This document shows, in pieces, positions 10,937-34,470 of a DNA stretch of 34,470 nucleotides. Below the pieces are notes generated by a model that searched no databases, was not told the DNA's origin, and worked only from the letters and a program-made list of their open reading frames with translations. The translations under genes were made by a program, and so were the position numbers. Origin of the DNA: Macrostomum lignano (Eukaryota); the NCBI GenBank assembly GCA_002269645.1, contig NIVC01000091.1:1-34470 (forward strand), read 5' to 3'. Numbering within the stretch: position 1 is the stretch's first letter; every line of letters begins with the position of its first letter.

Positions 10937-12078
10937 ATAGTGGCACTCTGCTGCAGTTCACATCATTTGTGATAGTGGCACTCTGGTGCAGTTCACATCA
11001 TGTGTGATAGTGGCACTCTGGTGCAGTTCACATCATGTGTGATAGTGGCACTCTGCTGCAGTTCACATCATTTGTGATAGTGGCACTCTGGTGCAGTTCA
11101 CATCATGTGTGATAGTGGCACTCTGCTGCAGTTCACATCATGTGTGATAGTGGCACTCTGCTGCAGTTCACATCATTTGTGATAGTGGCACTCTGGTGCA
11201 GTTCACATCATGTGTGATAGTGGCACTCTGGTGCAGTTCACATCATGTGTGATAGTGGCACTCTGGTGCAGTTCACATCATGTGTGATAGTGGCACTCTG
11301 GTGCAGTTCACATCATGTGTGATAGTGGCACTCTGCTGCAGTTCACATCATGTGTGATAGTGGCACTCTGCTGCAGTTCACATCATGTGTGATAGTGGCA
11401 CTCTGGTGCAGTTCACATCATGTGTGATAGTGGCACTCTGGTGCAGTTCACATCATTTGTGATAGTGGCACTCTAGTGCAGTTCACATCATGTGTGATAG
11501 TGGCACTCTGGTGCAGTTCACATTATGTGTGATAGTGGCACTCTGGTGCAGTTCACATCATGTGTGATAGTGGCACTCTGGTGCAGTTCACATCATGTGT
11601 GATAGTGGCACTCTGGTGCAGTTCACATCATTTGTGATAGTGGCACTCTGGTGCAGTTCACATCATGTGTGATAGTGGCACTCTGGTGCAGTTCACATCA
11701 TGTGTGATAGTGGCACTCTGGTGCAGTTCACATCATGTGTGATAGTGGCACTCTGGTGCAGTTCACATCATGTGTGATAGTGGCACTCTGGTGCAGTTCA
11801 CATCATTTGTGATAGTGGCACTCTGGTGCAGTTCACATCATGTGTGATAGTGGCACTCTGGTGCAGTTCACATCATGTGTGATAGTGGCACTCTGGTGCA
11901 GTTCACATCATGTGTGATAGTGGCACTCTGGTGCAGTTCACATCATTTGTGATAGTGGCACTCTGGTGCAGTTCACATCATGTGTGATAGTGGCACTCTG
12001 GTGCAGTTCACATCATGTGTGATAGTGGCACTCTGGTGCAGTTCACATCATGTGTGATAGTGGCACTCTCACATCATT
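10937..12078. repeat. 35-bp intronic minisatellite (GATAGTGGCACTCTGGTGCAGTTCACATCATGTGT), ~32 copies
   Basis: Highly homogeneous tandem units inside the kelch intron 9920-12728. Confidence 0.97.
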
Positions 12079-12395
12079 TCAAATTCTGCTAATAGCAGAA
12101 ATTCAATTTGCATAAGAAAAACTGATCTGATTTGTATTCTGATTCGGATAGGTAATATAATTATTAAATAAAAAACTGGGAGAGTCAAGAATATACACTT
12201 CACTGTTGCACTTTTCTATATTATTGATTCTGCATGATGATTCTAATGCACTTTGTGCCTAGCCTGATGGGACTTCTTTTAAATTTAATACTATATATTT
12301 TACCGAATATATTTAATTATACGTTATAATATGATATAGAATAGATTGAATTGTTTGGATTTGCTTTAAAGTGGCAGACATATAATTTACAACTT

Positions 12396-12474
12396 TCGGT
12401 CGAGAATCGAACCACCGACCTTCAAGTCGTGACTCCGACGCTCTGACCACTAGGCTACAACCCCTCCGGTGATA
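12396..12474 (-). mobile_element. tRNA-like SINE head
   Basis: Reverse strand GTTGTAGCCTAGTGGTCAGAGCGTCGGAGTCACGACTTGAAGGTCGGTGGTTCGATTCTC has clear A and B boxes. T and acceptor stems pair poorly. Confidence 0.65.
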
Positions 12475-12523
12475 TTGAGGAATGCTCTGTTATAAAGAGC
12501 AGCGTTTTCTATTTATTTATAGA

Positions 12524-12640
12524 TGCATTGCTTCAGTTCACCCAGCTGTAAAATGGGTGCCAGCATTAACTGGGGTAATTGAGGCTGTGTGTGTGGCGAC
12601 CCCCCCCAGTCCTTGGACTGAACAGCAATATAATAATAAT
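12524..12640 (+). mobile_element. 5'-truncated copy of the 7785-8100 SINE core
   Basis: About 100 bp at ~90% identity to 7899-7997, followed by a (TAA)n tail. Confidence 0.75.
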
Positions 12641-12728
12641 GTGCAACCAACCCCCAAGACACAGAGTGTACATGCCCGACATGCTTTGTTGCGCCAGGTT
12701 GTAAACAAAATCTTTTATACCCTGCCAG

Positions 12729-13309
12729 GTCACATGCTAATATTTGGCGGCGAAACTCGAGACCAACGGACCACAGACCAGCTGTGGTCATTGCGACTGA
12801 CCTCGGAGACTTGGACTCCGGTACGATCTGTACAGCAGCAGCGCCAGCAACGGCCAAGAGGCACGGTGCATCACAGTCTGCTGTCATTATTTCCGCACTA
12901 TACTAAGCCATCTATTCAACAAGTTAATAGTCGGTCTAACAACGAAGGTCGCGAGTTCGAATCTTCTCATTATAATCGTCATCAATGTTCCGGAGCGGAA
13001 ATTGAATTGGCAACAATTAGGCAGCCGGGTGGAGGACCAGTTGATGCGGCAGCGACTTCGGCAGCTGACCCCGTCTCGTGGGCGTTCGCTAATCCGTCTC
13101 TGTCCGTTTCGTCGAGCTGCGGTTCTACGGTTGGCGGCGCTTCTGCGGCTTCCATCGGCGCTGACGATAATGAACTCGACGCTGAACCCGCTGCTGTTGA
13201 TGGCAGCGGCGGCGAGTTTGGCGCCTCGGTGCTGTGCCTTGGCGCCCAGGAGACCGGATTCAAACGTAGCCCGTTAGCTATCTGGCGAGGTTGTTTCAGT
13301 TTAACCTGA
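12729..13309 (+). CDS. Kelch-repeat protein, terminal exon C
   Basis: Acceptor TTTTATACCCTGCCAG/12729. The phase-1 join gives FHSACIVQ-G-HMLIFGGETRDQRTTDQLWSLRLTSETW, one intact kelch blade across the intron. Stop TGA at 13309, AATAAA near 13425. Confidence 0.88.
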
Positions 13310-16042: not shown

Positions 16043-16459
16043 ATGGCAACTCGTTGGGGCTCCCTGCGACCGCACAAGACGGTGCCTTTTATCAAGTATT
16101 TTCGTAATCGCCTATCGGAGAATGACCAACAGATATCTCGGGACAAGCTGCGAAAATTCAATTTAAAACCAATTTCCGGCTTTCGATTCGAATACGACCC
16201 GTTTAATCCGCAGTCGGCTTCTTTAAGAAAACTGTGCAGCGTATTGCACACGCCGCGATGGCGAGCCAGCAATCTGGAGTGTCCCTGTCAGGTTGTCATT
16301 CGGGGCGATCGATCAGAGCCGACCCTTCTCGTCTCGTATTTCGACGGCCAGTCGCTGTTAGTTAAGACAGGCAATTTCAGTCTGGCAGATTTGGTGGAGT
16401 TAATTCAACGCCAGACTGATCTGCACGTGACCGATGCTGCTTCGCCTGCTTCTAGTTGA
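16043..16459 (+). CDS. MRPL53: 39S mitochondrial ribosomal protein L53 (mL53), single coding exon
   Basis: NLKPISGFRFEYDPFNPQSASLR...ASNLECPCQVVIRGDRSEPTLLVSY...LVKTGNFSLADLVELI matches the mL53 pattern (NLKxV..I.F.FDPF...S.R...TN..C......DRS.P). Start context GCATGG. Confidence 0.85.
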   Translation: MATRWGSLRPHKTVPFIKYFRNRLSENDQQISRDKLRKFNLKPISGFRFEYDPFNPQSASLRKLCSVLHTPRWRASNLECPCQVVIRGDRSEPTLLVSYFDGQSLLVKTGNFSLADLVELIQRQTDLHVTDAASPASS

Positions 16460-16536
16460 CTTCTTTGCAACTTGATATGATGCTTTCTTGCTTACATTTG
16501 TGCGTTTGCTATCCTTGTTTGCGATACTGGTTTGGT

Positions 16537-16712
16537 GTCCCATCTGTAGATCATTGGGTATGTTACACTGTCCCATCTATAGATCATTGGGTATGTTACA
16601 CTGTCCCATCTATAGATCATTGAGTATGTTACACTGTCCCATCTATAGATCATTGAGTATATTACAGTGTATAATCTATAGATCATTGGGTATGTTACAC
16701 TGTCTAATCTAT
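16537..16712. repeat. 33-bp minisatellite (GTCCCATCTATAGATCATTGGGTATGTTACACT), ~5 copies
   Basis: Seen directly, just 3' of MRPL53. Confidence 0.9.
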
Positions 16713-17126
16713 AGGCCATTACAGTGCTCTTCTATGCTAGAGTTTTTGTTCAAAAATACACCGACTAAATTAATTTTGGTGAAGCATTTTGTCATCTAAC
16801 AAAGTCCTAATAGTTGGTTTTCATACTGAAATTTATGTTTTTGTGTTTATTTAAAACCTCCTTTTATTTACTTTTTATACAGATGGGTACAGCTTAAGTT
16901 TATAATGTTGTACGCGGTTAGGTAGAATGTATGCTTGTCTTCTCTCTGTCTTCAGGTCATCGAAAAGTATCAAGTACGACCTAGAAAATGTCGATTATAA
17001 TTTGTTTTCATTTAAATTTACTGTTTTCGACAAAATTCATGAGGCCATCAACTTTTAATGACGTCACAATGACCTCGTGAATCGTCACCTGCGGAAAGCA
17101 GAGAATAATTAATAATCAAAGACACG

Positions 17127-18080
17127 ATGGCTCGTCGTTCAGACTGTTTTATAGGCACGATTCTGTGCCTCAACATCCTGGTATCCGTAGCCATTGTTGG
17201 CGTTAACAAATACGTCTATACGCATTACGGCTTTCCCAATTTGACTCTAACAATGATACACTTTGTTGTCACTTTTCTTGGCCTGCTAATCTGCAGATTG
17301 TTTGGCATTTTCCGCCCGAAAAATCTCCCGGTGCTTCGTATGCTGCCTCTGTCCCTCACCTTCTGCGGCTTTGTCGCCTTGACAAATCTTAGTCTGCAAT
17401 TCAACACTGTGGGCACCTATCAGGTGTTAAAGACTTTAACTACGCCCTGCATTATGACTATTAATGCCGTAGCTTATGGCAAACCATCATCCTGGCGTCT
17501 GCGTCTCACTTTTTTACCGGTTGTTGTTGGTGTTGCTTTGAATTCGCACTACGATTTAAAATTTAGCCCAATAGGTATGGCATTTGCCGCGGCTGGCGTG
17601 CTTGTGACGTCGCTTTACCAAATCTGGGTTGGCACTTTCCAGTCTAATTTGCAGTGCGACTCTGCTCAGCTGCTGTTCTATCAGGCGCCTTTGTCTGCTC
17701 TGCTTCTACTGCCACCGATTGCTTATTTTGAGCCACCATCGAGTGTCAGTTTGACTCTGAGCAGTCAGGCTGTCGGCATGGTTGGCCTGTCGGCTGGCAT
17801 CGCCTTCCTTGTTAATTTGTCCATCTATTGGATCATTGGCAATACGTCAGCTCTAACCTATAATATGGCCGGACATCTGAAATTCTGTTCGGCTCTCACT
17901 TTGGGCTACCTGATATTTAACGATCCAATATCGTTAGAACAAGTCATGGCTATACTACTAGTCTGCTTAGGTGTGTTCGCTTACTCTTGGGTTAAACTAC
18001 GAGAGGACATCGTTGCTAAGGCGGCTACCCAGCTGCCCACGACAGCATTGGGTCAGCAGTCAGTGAAGTCTGCTGCTTGA
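17127..18080 (+). CDS. SLC35E3: Solute carrier family 35 member E3 (nucleotide-sugar/TPT-family transporter), single coding exon
   Basis: 317 aa with ~10 hydrophobic segments. Motifs NKYVY...GFPNLTLTMIHF, FCGFVALTNLSLQFNTVGTYQVLK, QLLFYQAPLSA, LVNLSIYWIIGNTSALTYNMAGHLKF. Confidence 0.95.
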   Translation: MARRSDCFIGTILCLNILVSVAIVGVNKYVYTHYGFPNLTLTMIHFVVTFLGLLICRLFGIFRPKNLPVLRMLPLSLTFCGFVALTNLSLQFNTVGTYQVLKTLTTPCIMTINAVAYGKPSSWRLRLTFLPVVVGVALNSHYDLKFSPIGMAFAAAGVLVTSLYQIWVGTFQSNLQCDSAQLLFYQAPLSALLLLPPIAYFEPPSSVSLTLSSQAVGMVGLSAGIAFLVNLSIYWIIGNTSALTYNMAGHLKFCSALTLGYLIFNDPISLEQVMAILLVCLGVFAYSWVKLREDIVAKAATQLPTTALGQQSVKSAA

Positions 18081-18285: not shown

Positions 18286-18875
18286 ATACTTACTTTGCCT
18301 CCTTTGCTGTGTCTTCTTGATCCTTGAAGCTGTGTAATCACTATATGCATAGCACTCTGTATGCTTTTTTATCTGTAAAGCTTTGGTAGTTATTTCTTTG
18401 TTCATGTTTATTAACTTAAAGATTTTTTTCTGTTTTCGGATTCAAAAAACAATTCAGACTTCTACAGCTCAAGTATTAATCTTATTATAAAGTTTTAGTT
18501 GAAATGCTATAAAACTTTTATTTGACGTTAGAATTGAAGGTTCAGTGCCAATGGTTATTGGTTTCGCAAAGTATATTTCCTTGTATGTGTTCATTGTCAT
18601 GCTAATTAATTGTTAAAAGATAGTTTTTGGGATTTTTATCGATGTTTCCTCTCTTTATTGGGAATTCATTCTGTTGCTTTTCAACTGTCTTTTAGTCTGG
18701 GTTGTTGTTTTTACGAGTATATAATTTTTCCGACAAAACTCAAAGTTTGAACATTATATGACTAAAATAAAATATATATGCGCCTCTTTCTTACGTTTGT
18801 CATTTTGTTATAGATTAATCAAAAAAATGCATAGCATTTCGTTGGCTCTTATTTAATTTGATTATAAAGCAATAG

Positions 18876-18948
18876 TTAATTATCATTAGATTTCAGCACT
18901 TTAGCAGTATATGACGTCAGTAACACGTTTATTTCGTCACAGAAACTG
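18876..18948 (-). CDS. Small secreted protein, coding exon 4 (terminal)
   Basis: Tandem AAG/CAG acceptors (exon start 18948 or 18945), phase 2, reading (N)SFCDEINVLLTSYTAKVLKSNDN* with TAA ending at 18876. Confidence 0.65.
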
Positions 18949-19014
18949 CTTTTCAAAAGATCGTGAGTTCGTGTTATGCTTAGTCTTAAACTAAATCAAT
19001 ACCTGGATTCTTAC

Positions 19015-19073
19015 TTAATGGAATTTTCGAAATGGCAATAGACTTTCTCTTCCAATTCATCATAAAGAATGTT
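19015..19073 (-). CDS. Small secreted protein, coding exon 3
   Basis: Acceptor TTCTTTACAACCAG, NILYDELEEKVYCHFENSI, donor AA/GTAAGA. Phase 0 in, phase 2 out. Confidence 0.72.
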
Positions 19074-19098
19074 CTGGTTGTAAAGAAGTTACTTTTTG

Positions 19099-19965
19099 AA
19101 ACGGATTCCGTCAGACAGCCACTTCTTGGCACGGATTCCATGCGACAGCCACTTCTTGGCACGGATTCCATGCGACAGCCACTTCTTGGCACGGATTCCA
19201 TGCGACAGCCACTTCTTGGAACGGATTCCATGCGACAGCCACTTCTTGGCACGGATTCCATGCGACAGCCACTTCTTGGCACGGATTCCATGCGACAGCC
19301 ACTTCTTGGAACGGATTCCATGCGACAGCCACTTCTTGGCACGGATTCCATGCGACAGCCACTTCTTGGAACGGATTCCGTCAGACAGCCACTTCTTGGC
19401 ACGGATTCCATGCAACAGCCACTTCTTGGCACGGATTCCATGCGACAGCCACTTCTTGGAACGGATTCCATGCGACAGCCACTTCTTGGAACGGATTCCA
19501 TGCGACAGCCACTTCTTGGCACGGATTCCATGCGACAGCCACTTCTTGGAACGGATTCCGTCAGACAGCCACTTCTTGGCACGGATTCCATGCAACAGCC
19601 ACTTCTTGGAACGGATTCCATGCGACAGCCACTTCTTGGAACGGATTCCATGCGACAGCCACTTCTTGGCACGGATTCCATGCGACAGCCACTTCTTGGA
19701 ACGGATTCCGTCAGACAGCCACTTCTTGGCACGGATTCCATGCAACAGCCACTTCTTGGCACGGATTCCATGCGACAGCCACTTCTTGGCACGGATTCCG
19801 TCAGACAGCCACTTCTTGGCACGGATTCCATGCAACAGCCACTTCTTGGCACGGATTCCGTCAGACAGCCACTTCTTGGCACGGATTCCGTCAGACAGCC
19901 ACTTCTTGGCACGGATTCCGTCAGACAGCCACTTCTTGGCACGGATTCCGTCAGACAGCCACTTC
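19099..19965. repeat. 30-bp intronic minisatellite (ACGGATTCCATGCGACAGCCACTTCTTGGC), ~29 copies
   Basis: Occupies almost all of the 903-nt intron 19976-19074. Explains the five long track ORFs at 18986-20010. Confidence 0.97.
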
Positions 19966-19976
19966 GACTCGCTTAC

Positions 19977-20035
19977 AATTCCCAACTCGTCCATTGAATC
20001 TGTGACATAGTGAGCCTCAGACTCAAGCCCCAGTG
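19977..20035 (-). CDS. Small secreted protein, coding exon 2
   Basis: Acceptor CTAACTCATTTCAG, (A)LGLESEAHYVTDSMDELGI, donor ATT/GTAAGC. Phase 1 in, phase 0 out. Confidence 0.72.
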
Positions 20036-20127
20036 CTGAAATGAGTTAGTGATGTAAAACTCATTTGTGTTATTAAAAAACGTGACTAAATCATTTAGTA
20101 TCAAATGTACTTTTTTGCTTTACTCAC

Positions 20128-20173
20128 CGCTAAAAGCAGAGATGAGCAACAAAGTGGCGAAAACAAAGTTCAT
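20128..20173 (-). CDS. Small secreted protein, coding exon 1 (signal peptide)
   Basis: ATG 20173 MNFVFATLLLISAFS with an in-frame TAA upstream and donor G/GTGAGT. A candidate 5'-UTR intron spans 20307-20211 (GTAAGA...TCTTTAG). Confidence 0.72.
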
Positions 20174-20722
20174 ATTGCTTTTGGGCAAGATTTATAATGA
20201 TCTCGCTATCCTAAAGATGATGATTTGCGGTCTTTTTATGTCGATAATACTTATTGGGGAAATTCTACAGCATTGAATGGTGACAAAATGTATAATTTTA
20301 CTCTTACTTCGTCTCAAATCGTCTGTTGCCAGATTCTGCAAAGCTCAAGCTGCATTATTGTACGCTGTCTAAATATATTTTTTTCAGTTGATTCTGCCAC
20401 AGTTATTAACTATAAGCCGTTTCATTGGGTCTCTCGCTCTACCTTAAAAGAGTGTTTCTCGTTCTATCATTGGCCAATCAGAATTCTCCAGACACTTTAG
20501 GTTTGCAGCTCCTAAATTCTGACTACATTTAGATACTCGTATGTGTCAGTTATTGATTTTAGTCGATCGTATACAATCGTATAAATCATTAGTTATACGA
20601 GTACCGTAAACTGGTAACTTCGGTACATGTATCTAGTAGGATTCTGTAATTCTGTTGAAACGGCTTATTGATACGCACTGCATCGCTATTCAAAAACATT
20701 TTAGTGTGTTTACCTGTCGCTT

Positions 20723-25676: not shown

Positions 25677-25718
25677 TCAGTGCTTTTTTTGGCTTAGGAA
25701 TGCCTCGACACTGGGGTA
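25677..25718 (-). CDS. Giant repeat protein, probable terminal coding exon
   Basis: Acceptor TTTCCATTGCAG/25718, phase 0 matching the donor at 26216, reading YPSVEAFLSQKKH*. An AT-rich 3'UTR-like stretch follows. Confidence 0.6.
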   Translation of the reverse strand, partial: YPSVEAFLSQKKH

Positions 25719-27692: not shown

Positions 27693-30600
27693 CTGAATCC
27701 GGAGATTTTTCCAATATTTAAACGATCCGAGATGGCTAGCAGGTCGGCCTCCGATTCAGTGTCAGTCTGGAACTCCGATTCTGTCATGGCATCCTCAGCG
27801 TGCTGCCCAGCACGCGGTAGCAGGTCCGGCGCAACGAGTCCCTCGGCTCCGGTCTCCGAAATCGAAATCGACGCCAGCGAAGGGCGACTAAAATTTGAGG
27901 CCGCTGGACGCCGAGAGACAGTCGTTGAGTCCGCCGAATCTGCCGACATCAGGCCGGAAAAAGTGAACGAGGCGCCGCGACTGATCTCCTCAGACTGCTC
28001 AGCTTGAGGCGAAGACGTCTCAAAAAATGTGCCACTTTCCACAGCTTTAGACACGCTGATTTGAGTGCCGCGGCTAAACAAACGCTTCACACCTTCAGCT
28101 CCAGAGTCTGTGACAAACGGACGAGACGGTTGCCCTGATCCATCAACGAAGGAAGCACTACTAGCAGTGCACGGAGTGCTGAATTGCACAACACTCTCGC
28201 CATCATTTCTTTCTCGGAAGCAACCGCTAGCTACAGCAAAATTCTCTAAGCACACTTTGACACAGGACTGATCCAGACTAAACTCCTTACAACAGCCGCT
28301 AACAGCTAGACGAGATTCCTCCTTGAATCGAACTATACTCTCCGAGGAAACAAGTTCACGGAAGCAACCATCAGAAACTACTGTCTTACTGTCCACATCC
28401 AAGAAAGACCGCATCTCGCTTTCAACGAAAACTTTTTCCCTAAAGAAACCACTGCCAGTGACAAGGGCCTCATCTTTAAACTGAACTCTACTCACGCTCA
28501 GGTGTGACTCTTTGTAGCAGCAAGTCGAACTGATTGCAACAGTTTGATCGTGATGCACCTGGCTTTGTAAAAACGCGGTCTCTCTGAAGCAACCGCTTCC
28601 GGTCACGGTGATCTCCTCCTTGAACTGCACTCTGCTCTCGTTGTAGCTCGTCTCTCTGAAGCAACCGCTTCCGGTCACGGCGATCTCCTCCTTGAACTGC
28701 ACTCTGCTTTCATTGAGACTCATCTCTCTGAAGCAACCGCTTCCGGTCACGGCGATCTCCTCCTTGAATCGCACTCTGCTCTCGTTGTAGCTCGTCTCTC
28801 TGAAGCAACCGCTTCCGGTCACGGCGATCTCCTCCTTGAATCGCACTCTGCTCTCGTTGTAGCTCGTCTCTCTGAAGCAACCGCTTCCGGTCACGGCGAT
28901 CTCCTCCTTGAACTGCACTCTGCTTTCATTGAGACTCATCTCTCTGAAGCAACCGCTTCCGGTCACGGCGATCTCCTCCTTGAACTGCACTCTGCTTTCA
29001 TTGAGACTCATTTCTCTGAAGCAACCGCTTCCGGTCACGGCGATCTCCTCCTTGAATCGCACTCTGCTCTCGTTGTAGCTCGTCTCTCTGAAGCAACCGC
29101 TTCCGGTCACGGCGATCTCCTCCTTGAATCGCACTCTGCTCTCGTTGTAGCTCGTCTCTCTGAAGCAACCGCTTCCGGTCACGGCGATCTCCTCCTTGAA
29201 CTGCACTCTGCTTTCATTGAGACTCATTTCTCTGAAGCAACCGCTTCCGGTCACGGCGATCTCCTCCTTGAATCGCACTCTGCTCTCGTTGTAGCTCGTC
29301 TCTCTGAAGCAACCGCTTCCGGTCACGGCGATCTCCTCCTTGAATCGCACTCTGCTCTCGTTGTAGCTCGTCTCTCTGAAGCAACCGCTTCCGGTCACGG
29401 CGATCTCCTCCTTGAACTGCACTCTGCTTTCATTGAGCTCGTCTCTCTGAAGCAACCGCTTCCGGTCACGGCGATCTCCTCCTTGAATCGCACTCTGCTC
29501 TCGTTGTAGCTCGTCTCTCTGAAGCAACCGCTTCCGGTCACGGCGATCTCCTCCTTGAATCGCACTCTGCTCTCGTTGTAGCTCGTCTCTCTGAAGCAAC
29601 CGCTTCCGGTCACGGCGATCTCCTCCTTGAATCGCACTCTGCTCTCGTTGTAGCTCGTCTCTCTGAAGCAACCGCTTCCGGTCACGGCGATCTCCTCCTT
29701 GAATCGCACTCTGCTCTCGTTGTAGCTCGTCTCTCTGAAGCAACCGCTTCCGTCACGGCGATCTCCTCCTTGAACTGCACTCTGCTCTCGTTGAGACTCA
29801 TTTCTCTGAAGCAACCGCTTCCGGTCACGGCGATCTCCTCCTTGAATCGCACTCTGCTCTCGTTGTAGCTCGTCTCTCTGAAGCAACCGCTTCCGGTCAC
29901 GGCGATCTCCTCCTTGAATCGCACTCTGCTCTCGTTGTAGCTCGTCTCTCTGAAGCAACCTTCCGGTCACGGCGATCTCCTCCTTGCACTGCACTCTGCT
30001 CTCGTTGTAGCTCGTCTCTCTGAAGCAACCGCTTCCGGTCACGGCGATCTCCTCCTTGAACTGCACTCTGCTTTCATTGAGACTCATTTCTCTGAAGCAA
30101 CCGCTTCCGGTCACGGCGATCTCCTCCTTGAATCGCACTCTGCTCTCGTTGTAGCTCGTCTCTCTGAAGCAACCGCTTCCGGTCACGGCGATCTCCTCCT
30201 TGAATCGCACTCTGCTCTCGTTGTAGCTCGTCTCTCTGAAGCAACCGCTTCCGGTCACGGCGATCTCCTCCTTGAACTGCACTCTGCTTTCATTGAGCTC
30301 ATTTCTCTGAAGCAACCGCTTCCGGTCACGGCGATCTCCTCCTTGAATCGCACTCTGCTCTCGTTGTAGCTCGTCTCTCTGAAGCAACCGCTTCCGGTCA
30401 CGGCGATCTCCTCCTTGAATCGCACTCTGCTCTCGTTGTAGCTCGTCTCTCTGAAGCAACCGCTTCCGGTCACGGCGATCTCTCCTTGAACTGCATCTGC
30501 TCTCGTTGTAGCTCGTCTCTCTGAAGCAACCGCTTCCGGTCACGGCGATCTCCTCCTTGAACTGCACTCTGCTTCATTGAGCTCATTCTCTGAAGCAACC

Positions 30601-33600
30601 GCTTCCGGTCACGGCGATCTCCTCCTTGAATCGCACTCTGCTCTCGTTGTAGCTCGTCTCTCTGAAGCAACCGCTTCCGGTCACGGCGATCTCCTCCTTG
30701 ATCGCACTCTGCTCTCGTTGTAGCTCGTCTCTCTGAAGCAACCGCTTCCGGTCACGGCGATCTCCTCCTTGAATCGCACTCTGCTCTCGTTGTAGCTCGT
30801 CTCTCTGAAGCAACCGCTTCCGGTCACGGCGATCTCCTCCTTGAAATGCACTCTGCTTTCATTGAGACTCATCTCTCTGAAGCAACCGCTTCCGGTCACG
30901 GCGATCTCCTCCTTGAATCGCACTCTGCTCTCGTTGTAGCTCGTCTCTCTAAGCAACCGCTTCCGGTCACGGCGATCTCCTCCTTGAACTGCACTCTGCT
31001 TTCATTGAGACTCATCTCTCTGAAGCAACCGCTTCCGGTCACGGCGATCTCCTCCTTGAATCGCACTCTGCTCTCGTTGTAGCTCGTCTCTCTGAAGCAA
31101 CCGCTTCCGGTCACGGCGATCTCCTCCTTGAATCGCACTCTGCTCTCGTTGTAGCTCGTCTCTCTGAAGCAACCGCTTCCGGTCACGGCGATCTCCTCCT
31201 TGAATCGCACTCTGCTCTCGTTGTAGCTCGTCTCTCTGAAGCAACCGCTTCCGGTCACGGCGATCTCCTCCTTGAACTGCACTCTGCTTTCATTGAGACT
31301 CATTTCTCTGAAGCAACCGCTTCCGGTCACGGCGATCTCCTCCTTGAATCGCACTCTGCTCTCGTTGTAGCTCGTCTCTCTGAAGCAACCGCTTCCGGTC
31401 ACGGCGATCTCCTCCTTGAACTGCACTCTGCTTTCATTGAGACTCATTTCTCTGAAGCAACCGCTTCCGGTCACGGCGATCTCCTCCTTGAATCGCACTC
31501 TGCTCTCGTTGTAGCTCGTCTCTCTGAAGCAACCGCTTCCGGTCACGGCGATCTCCTCCTTGAATCGCACTCTGCTCTCGTTGTAGCTCGTCTCTCTGAA
31601 GCAACCGCTTCCGGTCACGGCGATCTCTCCTTGCACTGCATCTGCTCTCGTTGTAGCTCGTCTCTCTGAAGCAACCGCTTCCGGTCACGGCGATCTCCTC
31701 CTTGAACTGCACTCTGCTTCTTGTACTCGTTTCTCTGAAGCAACCGCTTCCGGTCACGGCGATCTCCTCCTTGAATCGCACTCTGCTCTCGTTGTAGCTC
31801 GTCTCTCTGAAGCAACCGCTTCCGGTCACGGCGATCTCCTCCTTGAATCGCACTCTGCTCTCGTTGTAGCTCGTCTCTCTGAAGCAACCGCTTCCGGTCA
31901 CGGCGATCTCCTCCTTGAATCGCACTCTGCTCTCGTTGTAGCTCGTCTCTCTGAAGCAACCGCTTCCGGTCACGGCGATCTCCTCCTTGAATCGCACTCT
32001 GCTCTCGTTGTAGCTCGTCTCTCTGAAGCAACCGCTTCCGGTCACGGCGATCTCCTCCTTGAATCGCACTCTGCTCTCGTTGTAGCTCGTCTCTCTGAAG
32101 CAACCGCTTCCGTCACGGCGATCTCCTCCTTGAACTGCACTCTGCTCTCGTTGAGCTCGTTCTCTGAAGCAACCGCTTCCGGTCACGGCGATCTCCTCCT
32201 TGAATCGCACTCTGCTCTCGTTGTAGCTCGTCTCTCTGAAGCAACCGCTTCCGGTCACGGCGATCTCCTCCTTGAACTGCACTCTGCTCTCGTTGTAGCT
32301 CGTCTCTCTGAAGCAACCGCTTCCGGTCACGGCGATCTCCTCCTTGAACTGCACTCTGCTTCGTTGAGACTCATCTCTGAAGCAACCGCTTCCGGTCACG
32401 GCGGCGATCTCCTCCTTGAATCGCACTCTGCTCTCGTTGTAGCTCGTCTCTCTGAAGCAACCGCTTCCGGTCACGGCGATCTCCTCCTTGAACTGCACTC
32501 TGCTTTCATTGAGACTCATCTCTCTGAAGCAACCGCTTCCGGTCACGGCGATCTCCTCCTTGAATCGCACTCTGCTCTCGTTGTAGCTCGTCTCTCTGAA
32601 GCAACCGCTTCCGGTCACGGCGATCTCCTCCTTGAATCGCACTCTGCTCTCGTTGTAGCTCGTCTCTCTGAAGCAACCGCTTCCGGTCACGGCGATCTCC
32701 TCCTTGAATCGCACTCTGCTCTCGTTGTAGCTCGTCTCTCTGAAGCAACCGCTTCCGGTCACGGCGATCTCCTCCTTGAATCGCACTCTGCTCTCGTTGT
32801 AGCTCGTCTCTCTGAAGCAACCGCTTCCGGTCACGGCGATCTCCTCCTTGAACTGCACTCTGCTCTCGTTGTAGCTCGTCTCTCTGAAGCAACCGCTTCC
32901 GGTCACGGCGATCTCCTCCTTGAATCGCACTCTGCTCTCGTTGAGACTCATTTCTCTGAAGCAACCGCTTCCGGTCACGGCGATCTCCTCCTTGAATCGC
33001 ACTCTGCTCTCGTTGTAGCTCGTCTCTCTGAAGCAACCGCTTCCGTCACGGCGATCTCCTCCTTGAACTGCACTCTGCTTTCATTGAGACTCATCTTCTC
33101 TGAAGCAACCGCTTCCGGTCACGGCGATCTCCTCCTTGAATCGCACTCTGCTCTCGTTGTAGCTCGTCTCTCTGAAGCAACCGCTTCCGGTCACGGCGAT
33201 CTCCTCCTTGAATTGCACTCTGCTCTCGTTGTAGCTCGTCTCTCTGAAGCAACCGCTTCCGGTCACGGCGATCTCCTCCTTGAATCGCACTCTGCTCTCG
33301 TTGTAGCTCGTCTCTCTGAAGCAGCCGCTTGCGGTCACGGCGATCTCCTCCTTGAAATGCACTCTGCTTTCATTGAGACTCATCTCTCTGAAGCAACCGC
33401 TTCCGGTCACGGCGATCTCCTCCTTGAATCGCACTCTGCTCTCGTTGTAGCTCGTCTCTCTAAAGCAACCGCTTCCGGTCACGGCGATCTCCTCCTTGAA
33501 CTGCACTCTGCTTTCATTGAGACTCATCTCTCTGAAGCAACCGCTTCCGGTCACGGCGATCTCCTCCTTGAATCGCACTCTGCTCTCGTTGTAGCTCGTC

Positions 33601-34470
33601 TCTCTGAAGCAACCGCTTCCGGTCACGGCGATCTCCTCCTTGAATCGCACTCTGCTCTCGTTGTAGCTCGTCTCTCTGAAGCAACCGCTTCCGGTCACGG
33701 CGATCTCCTCCTTGAATCGCACTCTGCTCTCGTTGTAGCTCGTCTCTCTGAAAGCAACCGCTTCCGGTCACGGCGATCTCCTCCTTGAACTGCACTCTGC
33801 TTTCATTGAGACTCATTTCTCTGAAGCAACCGCTTCCGGTCACGGCGATCTCCTCCTTGACTGCACTCTGCTTTCATTGAGACTCATTTCTCTGAAGCAA
33901 CCGCTTCCGGTCACGGCGATCTCCTCCTTGAATCGCACTCTGCTCTCGTTGTAGCTCGTCTCTCTGAAGCAACCGCTTCCGGTCACGGCGATCTCCTCCT
34001 TGAATCGCACTCTGCTCTCGTTGTAGCTCGTCTCTCTGAAGCAACCGCTTCCGGTCACGGCGATCTCCTCCTTGCACTGCACTCTGCTCTCGTTGTAGCT
34101 CGTTTCTGAAGCAACCGCTTCCGGTCACGGCGATCTCCTCCTTGAACTGCACTCTGCTTTCATTGATACTCATTTCTCTGAAGCAACCGCTTCCGGTCAC
34201 GGCGATCTCCTCCTTGAATCGCACTCTGCTCTCGTTGTAGCTCGTCTCTCTGAAGCAACCGCTTCCGGTCACGGCGATCTCCTCCTTGAATCGCACTCTG
34301 CTCTCGTTGTAGCTCGTCTCTCTGAAGCAACCGCTTCCGGTCACGGCGATCTCCTCCTTGAATCGCACTCTGCTCTCGTTGTAGCTCGTCTCTCTGAAGC
34401 AACCGCTTCCGGTCACGGCGATCTCCTCCTTGAATCGCACTCTGCTCTCGTTGTAGCTCGTCTCTCTGAA
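27693..34470 (-). CDS. Giant repeat protein, large repeat-containing exon (5' end outside window; apparent frameshifts above ~29436)
   Basis: One frame runs from the 24-aa repeats through diverged repeats and a Ser-rich unique region to candidate donor AG/GTTTGG at 27692, phase 2, matching the next exon. The donor is weak. Repeated 1-2-nt indels occur above ~29436. Confidence 0.7.
28579..34470 (-). repeat. 72-bp coding tandem repeat, ~82 copies, unit ESRV(R/Q)FKEEIAVTGSGCFRE(TSY/MSL)N
   Basis: Exact 72-bp period with two interspersed unit variants. About 6 diverged units continue at 28150-28578. The array runs off the window end. Confidence 0.97.

What the first reader, a model, noticed from the sequence alone, without database searches (positions are those of the whole stretch)
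18876..20360. Hidden four-exon gene for a small secreted acidic protein
Four short exons (46, 59, 59 and 73 nt) with canonical splice sites and matching phases (1, 0, 2) join to MNFVFATLLLISAFSALGLESEAHYVTDSMDELGINILYDELEEKVYCHFENSINSFCDEINVLLTSYTAKVLKSNDN*. It has a clear signal peptide, an acidic mature part (13 D/E, 3 K), two Cys and three DE[LI] motifs. It lacks dibasic sites, so it is not a classical neuropeptide precursor. It is masked by spurious minisatellite ORFs and matches no family I recognise. It could be a lineage-specific secreted effector (pheromone, seminal, mucus or adhesive component).
Basis: partly seen in the sequence, partly recalled or inferred. Interest (0 to 1): 0.7.

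Follow-up and report, generated by a model that had tools for sequence, protein, structure and literature searches.

The report
Secreted peptide-repeat gene, not four exons

Summary
The window is contig NIVC01000091.1 of Macrostomum lignano (flatworm). The gene is on the minus strand.

**Observation.** The four exons, their splice sites, phases and 78-aa translation are exactly as described.

**Exons 1-2 are supported.** They match coding sequences annotated on two duplicate contigs, with the same ATG and the same 92-nt intron.

**The annotated sequences differ after exon 2.** They read in frame through the 30-bp minisatellite to a TAA at 19091-19089. The product is a signal peptide, an acidic spacer, then 15, 17 or 29 copies of K-WLS[D/H]GIR[A/S]-K.

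**The repeat frame looks coding.**
- A paralogous M. lignano array (KKWLSDGFRN) differs at 9 of 30 bases yet keeps 8 of 10 residues.
- In that frame pS is 0.81 and pN is 0.17. The other two frames show no such bias.
- The chance of this pattern under random substitution is about 0.001.

**Exons 3-4 are weak.**
- They have non-coding base composition and no homologue.
- One duplicate carries an in-frame TAG in exon 3.
- A chain of this quality arises in 2.7% of shuffles, so an alternative isoform is not excluded.

**Best reading.** This is an orphan secreted decapeptide-repeat polyprotein, possibly cleaved at its conserved RxKK sites. RNA junction reads would settle the gene structure.

The parts
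20128..20173 (-). Coding exon 1 (46 nt). It encodes MNFVFATLLLISAFS plus the first base of the Ala codon, that is, the signal peptide. It is followed by a phase-1 intron.
   Evidence: hydrophobic core; in-frame TAA 6 codons upstream. The coding sequences called on the duplicate contigs L002 and L003 use the same ATG.
20036..20127 (-). Intron 1, 92 nt. It runs GTGAGT ... CACTAAC ... TTTCAG and is 27% GC.
   Evidence: The called coding sequences of 210 aa (725-nt range) and 190 aa (665-nt range) each need exactly 92 nt removed. This is the only GT-AG interval that joins the ATG to their stop.
19965..20035 (-). First part of coding exon 2. It holds the end of the signal peptide and the acidic spacer ALGLESEAHYVTDSMDELGIVSES.
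   Evidence: The spacer motif LES..H.V..D is shared with M. lignano paralogues P0010, P0035 and P0009, in the same frame as their arrays.
19095..19964 (-). Coding minisatellite of 29 units of 30 bp (AAG TGG CTG TCT GAC GGA ATC CGT GCC AAG). It encodes K-WLS[D/H]GIR[A/S]-K. Six unit types give the peptides WLSDGIRA, WLLHGIRA, WLSHGIRA, WLSDGIRS, WLSHGIRS and a terminal WLSDGIRF.
   Evidence: TRF finds 19101-19965, period 30, 28.8 copies, 0% indels. Unit map. Frame-specific conservation against the paralogous unit: pS 0.81, pN 0.17, P about 0.001. The frame is open in all three duplicates with 29, 17 and 15 units.
19089..19094 (-). Last Lys codon and the TAA stop of the read-through ORF. The stop lies in a decayed repeat unit (TGG changed to TAA).
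   Evidence: The position coincides with the end of the called coding sequences in L002 and L003.
19074..19976 (-). GTAAC TTCTTTAC AACCAG. It is almost wholly the minisatellite. It may be used as an alternative, exitron-like intron.
   Evidence: No RNA evidence is available here. No in-frame GTRAG is possible in the spacer of paralogue P0035 (inferred from its protein sequence).
19015..19073 (-). It is most likely 3' UTR.
   Evidence: GC content is like the non-coding flanks. In L002 it has a 3-nt insertion giving an in-frame TAG, plus an N-to-H change at the exon 3/4 junction codon (its changed base lies in exon 3) and two silent changes.
18949..19014 (-). CTCAC ... TCTTTTGAAAAG(CAG).
   Evidence: Unverified.
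18876..18948 (-). It is most likely 3' UTR.
   Evidence: Identical in all three copies, as is the following sequence up to the poly(A) signal. There is no homologue.
18852..18857 (-). ATTAAA poly(A) signal. The probable transcript end is shortly downstream.
   Evidence: Differences between the copies are concentrated 3' of this point. For L003 there are none in about 273 columns before it and 6 events in about 140 columns after it.
20191..20196 (-). TATAAA motif 23 nt upstream of the ATG. It is too close to serve as a classical TATA box for this ATG. A second TATA-like CATAAAAAG lies at 20240-20232.
   Evidence: Sequence motif only.

Best explanation
This is a gene with two coding exons on the minus strand of Macrostomum lignano contig NIVC01000091.1.

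**Structure (shown).**
- Exon 1 (20173-20128) encodes a signal peptide.
- After a 92-nt phase-1 intron, exon 2 (20035-19089) encodes a 21-residue acidic spacer.
- Exon 2 then continues in frame into a 30-bp coding minisatellite of 29 decapeptide units, K-WLS[D/H]GIR[A/S]-K.
- The ORF ends at a TAA in a decayed terminal unit. The product is 330 aa.
- Also shown: the signal-like N-terminus, the annotation of the same model on two duplicate contigs, and frame-specific constraint on the repeat unit.

**How it works (inferred).**
- The protein enters the secretory pathway.
- Each unit carries the conserved motif R-x-K-K followed by Trp. The array is probably cut at these sites by a proprotein convertase and trimmed by a carboxypeptidase.
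- This would release about 29 copies of a non-amidated octapeptide (WLSDGIRA, WLSHGIRA and variants). It would be a multi-copy bioactive-peptide precursor.
- Unequal exchange in the array changes the peptide dose between copies (29, 17 and 15 units).
- The role of the peptide (neural, antimicrobial, pheromonal or reproductive) is unknown.
For: 1. The organism and duplicates are identified. The window is NIVC01000091.1 of GCA_002269645.1, and its neighbours are BOX15_Mlig proteins.
2. Coding sequences called on duplicates L002 (11995-12719, 210 aa) and L003 (12550-13214, 190 aa) start at the same ATG. They end at the TAA just after the array. They fit only if the 92-nt intron 1 is removed and the array is read through. 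That annotation was built from RNA-seq with StringTie/TACO plus TransDecoder (PMC5730564).
3. Three M. lignano UniProt models carry the arrays KKWLSDGFRN or KKW[IL]GDGFRS behind a related spacer. They are A0A1I8FXQ2 ('Secreted protein'), A0A1I8FF56 and A0A1I8IJ38.
4. P0009 reads its array in all three frames, which fixes its DNA unit uniquely.
5. Against the window unit, 9 of 30 bases differ but 8 of 10 residues are kept. In this frame pS is 0.81 and pN is 0.17. The other two frames keep 4 of 10 residues each, with pN at least about as high as pS. The chance of keeping 8 of 10 residues after 9 random substitutions is 0.001.
6. The columns invariant across paralogues are K, W, D, G, R and K-K.
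7. The read-through ORF is intact in all three copies, whereas the 4-exon ORF has a stop in L002.
8. Exons 3-4 have non-coding GC content.
9. No compact fold is predicted: a long low-confidence helix with pTM 0.24. This is compatible with a precursor.
Against: - Minisatellites are everywhere in this contig. A 35-bp array lies within the 5.7-kb range of the neighbouring Kelch gene, whose coding sequence is only 546 aa, and is probably intronic.
- Two of the three frames on this strand are open across the array, so read-through alone proves nothing.
- TransDecoder picks the longest ORF. By its default minimum length (from memory, not checked here) it would ignore a 78-aa ORF, so the annotation cannot tell a retained intron from a true exon.
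- The constraint test rests on one 30-nt unit pair. The paralogue was found by a protein search in this frame, which introduces some selection bias.
- Variation between units inside the array is not biased towards silent sites.
- Against processing: there is no Gly for amidation, KK is a less favoured convertase site, and at 330 aa the protein is longer than typical flatworm prohormones (criterion in PMC2953531).
- No RNA or peptide data could be examined.
Confidence: 0.6

Rival explanations
1. Two isoforms exist. The array-containing mRNA gives the decapeptide-repeat protein. An alternative use of the GTAAGC donor removes the array as an exitron-like intron of 903 nt, and intron 3 is also spliced. 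That isoform gives the reader's 78-aa acidic protein.
For: Both signals are individually unlikely by chance. The frame-specific constraint on the array has P of about 0.001. A well-formed splice chain has GTAAGC, then GTAAC-polyY-CAG, then GTAAGA, then CTCAC-polyY-AAG/CAG with phases kept. Such a chain arises in 2.7% of shuffles for the 3' part alone. Exon 4 and the sequence up to the poly(A) signal are identical in all three copies.
Against: Exon 3 has an in-frame TAG in L002. Exons 3-4 have non-coding composition and no homologue, even among the paralogues. No GTRAG can sit in frame in the spacer of paralogue P0035. Conservation up to the poly(A) signal is equally expected of a UTR.
Confidence: 0.2
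2. It is a four-exon gene for a 78-aa acidic secreted protein. The 30-bp array is a non-coding intronic minisatellite, and the annotated read-through ORFs are retained-intron artefacts.
For: Canonical splice sites and matching phases are present. With a single unit, intron 2 would be about 63 nt, similar to introns 1 (92 nt) and 3 (66 nt). A 35-bp array lies within the range of the neighbouring Kelch gene and is probably intronic. Two of three frames are open across the array by construction. A 78-aa ORF would fall under TransDecoder's usual length limit (for the method; the limit is from memory).
Against: The silent-site excess and the 8 of 10 residues conserved with a 30%-diverged paralogous unit occur only in the frame joined to exon 2. 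The spacer and array stay in one frame in three paralogue types despite length differences. There is a stop codon in exon 3 of L002. GC content is non-coding. No homologue exists.
Confidence: 0.07
3. The gene structure is the same as in the best explanation, but the repeat protein is not cleaved. It acts as an intact, basic, amphipathic repetitive secreted protein, for example a component of mucus, adhesive, eggshell or seminal fluid.
For: The gene encodes a signal peptide plus a long regular repeat. AlphaFold draws one continuous helix, though at low confidence. There is no amidation signal. KK is a weak convertase site. The protein is longer than the <200 aa criterion used for planarian prohormones. 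Repetitive secreted proteins are common in flatworm secretions (general knowledge).
Against: The invariant residues include the full R-x-K-K-W context, which is typical of processing sites. Structural repeats usually have a biased composition rather than a defined 8-residue motif. An acidic pro-region precedes the basic array, as in peptide precursors.
Confidence: 0.25
4. Neither long product is functional. The locus is a decaying or non-coding transcript, and the apparent coding signal in the array is a chance or selection-biased result.
For: The constraint test uses only 9 differences in one unit pair. The paralogue was found through a protein search in this frame. P0009's array is frameshifted repeatedly. 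No homologue was found outside M. lignano.
Against: The ORF is intact in three copies with 61 units in all. The signal-peptide exon and intron 1 are identical or nearly identical in the three copies. Two independent paralogue types keep the peptide motif.
Confidence: 0.08

Closest known systems
Coding sequences annotated on the duplicate contigs NIVC01003752.1 (L002 11995-12719, 210 aa) and NIVC01000090.1 (L003 12550-13214, 190 aa) of M. lignano assembly Mlig_3_7
   Same: This is the same gene. The ATG, signal peptide, 92-nt intron, spacer, repeat unit and stop are shared. The flanks are 94-100% identical, with the same SLC35/TPT and mL53 neighbours.
   Different: The unit number is 17 and 15 against 29 in the window. 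No gene is listed at this spot for the window contig.
M. lignano UniProt models A0A1I8FXQ2 ('Secreted protein'), A0A1I8FTA2, A0A1I8FF56 and A0A1I8IJ38 (P0035, P0156, P0009, P0010)
   Same: They carry tandem decapeptides K-K-W-[LI]-[SG]-D-G-[FI]-R-x. These follow a related spacer (H-x-V-x-D/G ... acidic) in the same frame.
   Different: The units are KKWLSDGFRN and KKW[IL]GDGFRS, with 30% DNA divergence for the first. The N-termini differ. The long models are evidently poor predictions: they run through other repeats, and P0009 changes frame inside its array. Their DNA could not be fetched.
Multi-copy neuropeptide or peptide-hormone precursors, such as FMRFamide-type precursors and the planarian prohormones of Collins et al. 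2010 (PMC2953531)
   Same: They share a signal peptide, a pro-region, and many tandem copies of a short conserved peptide, each flanked by basic residues. The peptide is more conserved than the spacer.
   Different: There is no sequence homology. The sites are KK only (with Arg at P4). There is no C-terminal Gly for amidation. At 190-330 aa the protein is at or above the <200 aa working limit. No cDNA, mass-spectrometry or expression evidence exists.
Non-coding intronic minisatellites of the M. lignano genome (simple and tandem repeats make up 15% of the assembly, PMC5730564)
   Same: It is a 30-bp array with no indels between units. Copy number differs between duplicates and there is higher-order structure. 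It lies among 13 other arrays in this 34-kb contig.
   Different: It is joined in frame to a signal-peptide-bearing exon. It also shows frame-specific conservation against a diverged paralogous array.

Membership tests
Peptide prohormone (working criteria of Collins et al. 2010, PMC2953531) | N-terminal signal sequence | tested here: met
   The hydrophobic core at residues 3-17 has a Kyte-Doolittle mean of 2.0-2.5. A-L-G before L19 fits the -3/-1 rule (plus inspection). SignalP itself was not available.
Peptide prohormone (working criteria of Collins et al. 2010, PMC2953531) | Basic cleavage sites flanking the predicted peptides | tested here: met
   Every unit is bounded by K-K with Arg at P4. 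K, K and R are invariant in the paralogue alignment. Actual cleavage was not tested.
Peptide prohormone (working criteria of Collins et al. 2010, PMC2953531) | Precursor shorter than 200 aa | tested here: not met
   The window copy is 330 aa and L002 is 210 aa. Only L003 (190 aa) passes (criterion).
Peptide prohormone (working criteria of Collins et al. 2010, PMC2953531) | Gene model verified by cDNA, and peptides seen by mass spectrometry | not testable with these tools
   No reads, cDNA or peptidome data were accessible. The annotation on the duplicates was RNA-seq guided, but its exon evidence could not be inspected.
   It is intact in the window and L003. L002 has an AAT insertion giving E-E-stop in exon 3.
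   GC is 0.32 and GC3 is 0.37, like intron 3 and the flanks. No hit has E <= 10, and there is nothing similar in the paralogue models.
   No RNA-seq access. The relevant public runs are named in PMC5730564 (SRP082513, SRR2682326).
M. lignano KKW-decapeptide repeat proteins (A0A1I8FXQ2 group; informal family) | Tandem 10-residue unit K-W-x-x-D-G-x-R-x-K preceded in frame by an acidic H-x-V spacer | tested here: met
   The alignment A2 invariant columns are H24, V26, K40, W41, D44, G45, R47, K49 and K50. A profile search returns P0035 at E = 1e-32. phmmer gives E = 8.5e-40 for P0010 and 4.3e-40 for P0009, although repeats inflate these values.
Non-coding (intronic) minisatellite | No reading-frame-specific constraint between diverged copies | tested here: not met
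   Frame B has pS 0.81 against pN 0.17 and keeps 8 of 10 residues. The other frames keep 4 of 10 each, with pN at least about as high as pS. P is 0.001. The caveat is that this is one unit pair.

The most novel reading that the evidence does not exclude
A coding minisatellite acts as a copy-number dial for a lineage-specific secreted octapeptide, with 15, 17 and 29 copies in three duplicates. The same array can also be spliced out as an exitron-like intron. One gene would then switch between a basic multi-peptide precursor and a small acidic protein with a different C-terminus.
Probability: 0.12. Interest if true: 0.6.

Novelty: new member of a known kind. Interest (0 to 1): 0.35.

Why it matters
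In a genome where simple and tandem repeats make up 15% of the DNA, repeat arrays are routinely masked or treated as introns. This locus shows that at least some of them are translated. Masking them hides secreted peptide-repeat genes or leads to wrong gene models.

If the KK-flanked octapeptides are really released, this would be an uncharacterised bioactive-peptide family in a genetically tractable regenerating flatworm. The peptide dose would differ between duplicated gene copies.

For the scan itself, the lesson is practical. A neat chain of short exons around a repeat should be tested against in-frame read-through of the repeat before it is called a hidden gene.

Tried and rejected
- **Protein searches.** The 78-aa and the 210-aa products found nothing with the word-indexed search. 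The index seems blind to this repeat. The exhaustive phmmer search gave 267 hits. Among the 150 listed, only P0009, P0010 and P0035 carry the motif; the rest are repeat-against-repeat artefacts.
- **Paralogue DNA.** It could not be fetched for P0035, P0009 or P0010, because no gene record exists. I therefore reconstructed one paralogous unit from the three frames present in P0009.
- **Exact look-ups.** The 330-, 210-, 190- and 78-aa products are not in the protein collection. No locus tag or expression data could be tied to the gene.
- **Codon usage.** Usage relative to the two neighbouring genes did not discriminate.
- **Unit variation inside the array.** It shows no silent-site bias and is not informative.
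- **Pfam.** Only sub-threshold noise.
- **AlphaFold, single sequence.** A low-confidence long helix, not decisive. No fold search was run on it.
- **Literature.** Searches for the peptide strings, and for M. lignano neuropeptide or secreted-repeat genes, found nothing specific.
- **Bacterial-style promoter and terminator scans, tRNA and Rfam tools.** Not used, as they do not apply to this eukaryotic locus.
Full report
**Where we are.** The window is the whole contig NIVC01000091.1 of assembly GCA_002269645.1. Its neighbouring proteins cluster with GenBank entries named BOX15_Mlig... from Macrostomum lignano. This is a free-living flatworm. Its assembly is known to be redundant and more than half repetitive, with simple and tandem repeats making up 15% (PMC5730564). 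The contig fits that description: TRF finds 14 separate minisatellite arrays in 34 kb. Recognisable genes around the finding are:
- a Kelch-repeat gene;
- mL53 (16043-16459, + strand);
- a single-exon SLC35/TPT transporter (17127-18080, + strand);
- a BspA-type LRR repeat gene at the right end.

**Checking the observation.** The candidate lies on the minus strand.
- The exons are 20173-20128, 20035-19977, 19073-19015 and 18948-18876 (46, 59, 59 and 73 nt).
- The donors are GTGAGT, GTAAGC and GTAAGA. The acceptors are TTTCAG, AACCAG and GAAAAG.
- The phases are 1, 0 and 2, and the 78-aa translation matches.
- The N-terminus is a convincing signal peptide by hydrophobicity. An in-frame TAA lies six codons upstream of the ATG.
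- An ATTAAA signal follows the last stop at 18857-18852.
- Intron 2 (903 nt) is almost entirely the 30-bp minisatellite at 19101-19965, with 28.8 copies.

**Independent support for the first half.** The SLC35 protein is also encoded on two other contigs of the same assembly: L002 (NIVC01003752.1) and L003 (NIVC01000090.1). Both carry the whole locus at 94-100% identity.
- In both, a coding sequence is called on the minus strand just downstream of SLC35: 11995-12719 (210 aa) and 12550-13214 (190 aa).
Both run in frame through the minisatellite to a TAA immediately after it.
- In the window the same model gives 330 aa. It comprises the signal peptide, the spacer LESEAHYVTDSMDELGIVSES, and then 29 units K-WLS[D/H]GIR[A/S]-K, with the stop at 19091-19089.
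- The annotation was made from RNA-seq with StringTie/TACO and TransDecoder. Transcription and intron 1 therefore have RNA support.
- The annotation cannot settle whether the array is exon or retained intron. It keeps the longest ORF, and two of the three frames on this strand are open across the array anyway.

**Is the array coding?** The word-indexed protein searches found nothing. An exhaustive phmmer search with the 301-aa ORF (window 19089-19994, minus strand) found three proteins that share the actual decapeptide, among many repeat artefacts. These are P0035, P0009 and P0010.
- All three are M. lignano UniProt models (A0A1I8FXQ2 'Secreted protein', A0A1I8FF56, A0A1I8IJ38). A fourth, P0156, appeared in a profile search.
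- Their units are KKWLSDGFRN and KKW[IL]GDGFRS.
- In front of the arrays, in the same frame, lies a related acidic spacer. Compare LESSSHEVSGYDDDERLTKKW... with LESEAHYVTDSMDELGIVSESKW... in the window.
- Their DNA could not be fetched.
- However, P0009 slips through all three frames of its own array (KKWLSDGFRN, SGSPMASGTR, VALRWLQEQE). This determines its 30-nt unit uniquely as AAG TGG CTC TCC GAT GGC TTC AGG AAC AAG.
- The window unit is AAG TGG CTG TCT GAC GGA ATC CGT GCC AAG. Nine bases differ between the two.
- Four differences are silent third-position changes (Leu, Ser, Asp, Gly). Two more convert CGT to AGG, both Arg. Only Ile-to-Phe and Ala-to-Asn change the peptide.
- By Nei-Gojobori counting, pS is 0.81 and pN is 0.17 in the frame joined to exon 2. 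In the other two frames pN is at least about as high as pS, and only 4 of 10 residues are kept in each.
- Nine random substitutions keep at least 8 of 10 residues in 0.1% of trials.
- The invariant columns across the paralogues are K, W, D, G, R and K-K.

This is the signature of a translated, selected peptide, in a frame that was fixed in advance by the signal-peptide exon. There are two caveats. The test rests on a single unit pair. The paralogue was found through a protein search in this same frame.

**What this does to exons 3 and 4.** Several observations weaken them.
- Their GC content (0.32; GC3 0.37) matches intron 3 (0.33) and the flanks (0.26-0.36). Exons 1-2 have 0.46 and the neighbouring coding sequences 0.48.
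- They have no homologue anywhere, not even in the paralogue models.
- In L002, exon 3 has gained AAT, which creates an in-frame TAG (…DELEE*). L002 also has an Asn-to-His change at the exon 3/4 junction and two silent changes. The read-through ORF is intact in all three copies.
It falls in a 5-codon stretch that the P0035-type paralogue lacks. No in-frame GTRAG is possible in that paralogue's spacer (inference from the protein sequence).
- The identity of exon 4 in all copies extends through the 3' sequence up to the poly(A) signal. Differences then accumulate. That is what a UTR would also show.

- A two-exon completion of this quality occurs in only 2.7% of dinucleotide shuffles of the sequence after the array.
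- GTAAGC, GTAAC-polyY-CAG and GTAAGA are good signals.
- With one repeat unit, intron 2 would be about 63 nt, like introns 1 and 3.
- A 35-bp array lies within the 5.7-kb range of the 546-aa Kelch gene next door and is probably intronic.

**Mechanism.**
- Shown: the gene structure up to the array, the signal-like N-terminus, the in-frame array, its constraint, and its copy-number variation. The unit maps are AAAABACBDCEEBDCEECBDCECCECCCF, AAAABACBDCDCECCCF and AAAAAABACECCCCF.
- Inferred: secretion, and cleavage at the conserved R-x-K-K sites to release non-amidated octapeptides.
- By the working criteria used for planarian prohormones (signal sequence, basic sites flanking the peptides, <200 aa; PMC2953531), the first two are met and the third is not.
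- No amidation Gly is present, and KK is a weak convertase site.
- An uncleaved basic repeat protein therefore remains a serious alternative (about 0.25). AlphaFold gives only a low-confidence continuous helix, and Pfam gives nothing.

**Novelty and verdict.**
- The family is uncharacterised. No paper in the library contains the peptide strings.
- It appears restricted to M. lignano in the databases searched.
- The gene itself is already annotated as a coding sequence on two duplicate contigs. Secreted tandem-peptide polyproteins are a known kind.
- The finding is real as a gene and wrong in its second half. It is of moderate interest, and a few minutes of RNA-seq mapping would resolve the gene structure.

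Noticed in passing
window 28578-34470 (minus strand; ORFs from 27488): A 72-bp array of 82 copies encodes 24-residue BspA-type leucine-rich repeats (Pfam LRR_5, E = 2e-17). It appears to belong to a called gene of 983 aa that starts near 25677 and runs past the end of the fetched locus (window 28080), while the array runs off the contig end. The frame is broken many times along the array, with ORFs in several frames and 2% indels. Either long-read errors or decay could explain this. It is a second, much larger coding minisatellite in the same contig.
   Followed up: partly
window 18700-20500 versus L002 11610-13046 and L003 12167-13541: The copies relate to each other as a mosaic. Upstream of the array the window is 100% identical to L002 (535 nt), while L003 has 3 mismatches. 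Downstream of the array the window is closer to L003 (97%, with all differences 3' of the poly(A) signal) than to L002 (94%). The array seems to be a recombination or gene-conversion breakpoint, or else an assembly join.
   Followed up: partly
window 16043-18080 (+ strand): The mL53 and SLC35/TPT genes are both single-exon, lie on the same strand and are about 670 nt apart. On the duplicate contig they carry tags g2 and g3 of one transcriptional unit (BOX15_Mlig012542). This suggests a trans-spliced polycistronic unit, which PMC5730564 describes as common in this species.
   Followed up: no
window 383-26142 (14 arrays); L003 1-14500: Minisatellite density is extraordinary, with periods of 23, 18, 24, 35, 21, 21, 31, 33, 30, 20, 21, 41, 20 and 72 bp. 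Copy numbers differ between duplicate contigs, for example 32 against 49 copies for the 35-bp array. Eight of the 14 periods are multiples of 3. Apart from the 30-bp and 72-bp arrays, none was tested for coding.
   Followed up: no
P0009 (UniProt A0A1I8FF56), residues about 55-300: This paralogous gene model reads one 30-bp array in all three frames in turn. The underlying ML2-type sequence therefore has several frameshifts inside the array. These could be assembly errors or a decaying paralogue. The long UniProt models P0009 and P0010 ('ANK_REP_REGION domain-containing') look like run-on predictions through several unrelated repeats.
   Followed up: partly
Both AGs keep the frame, so the 4-exon model has a 77-aa variant lacking one Ser.
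   Followed up: yes
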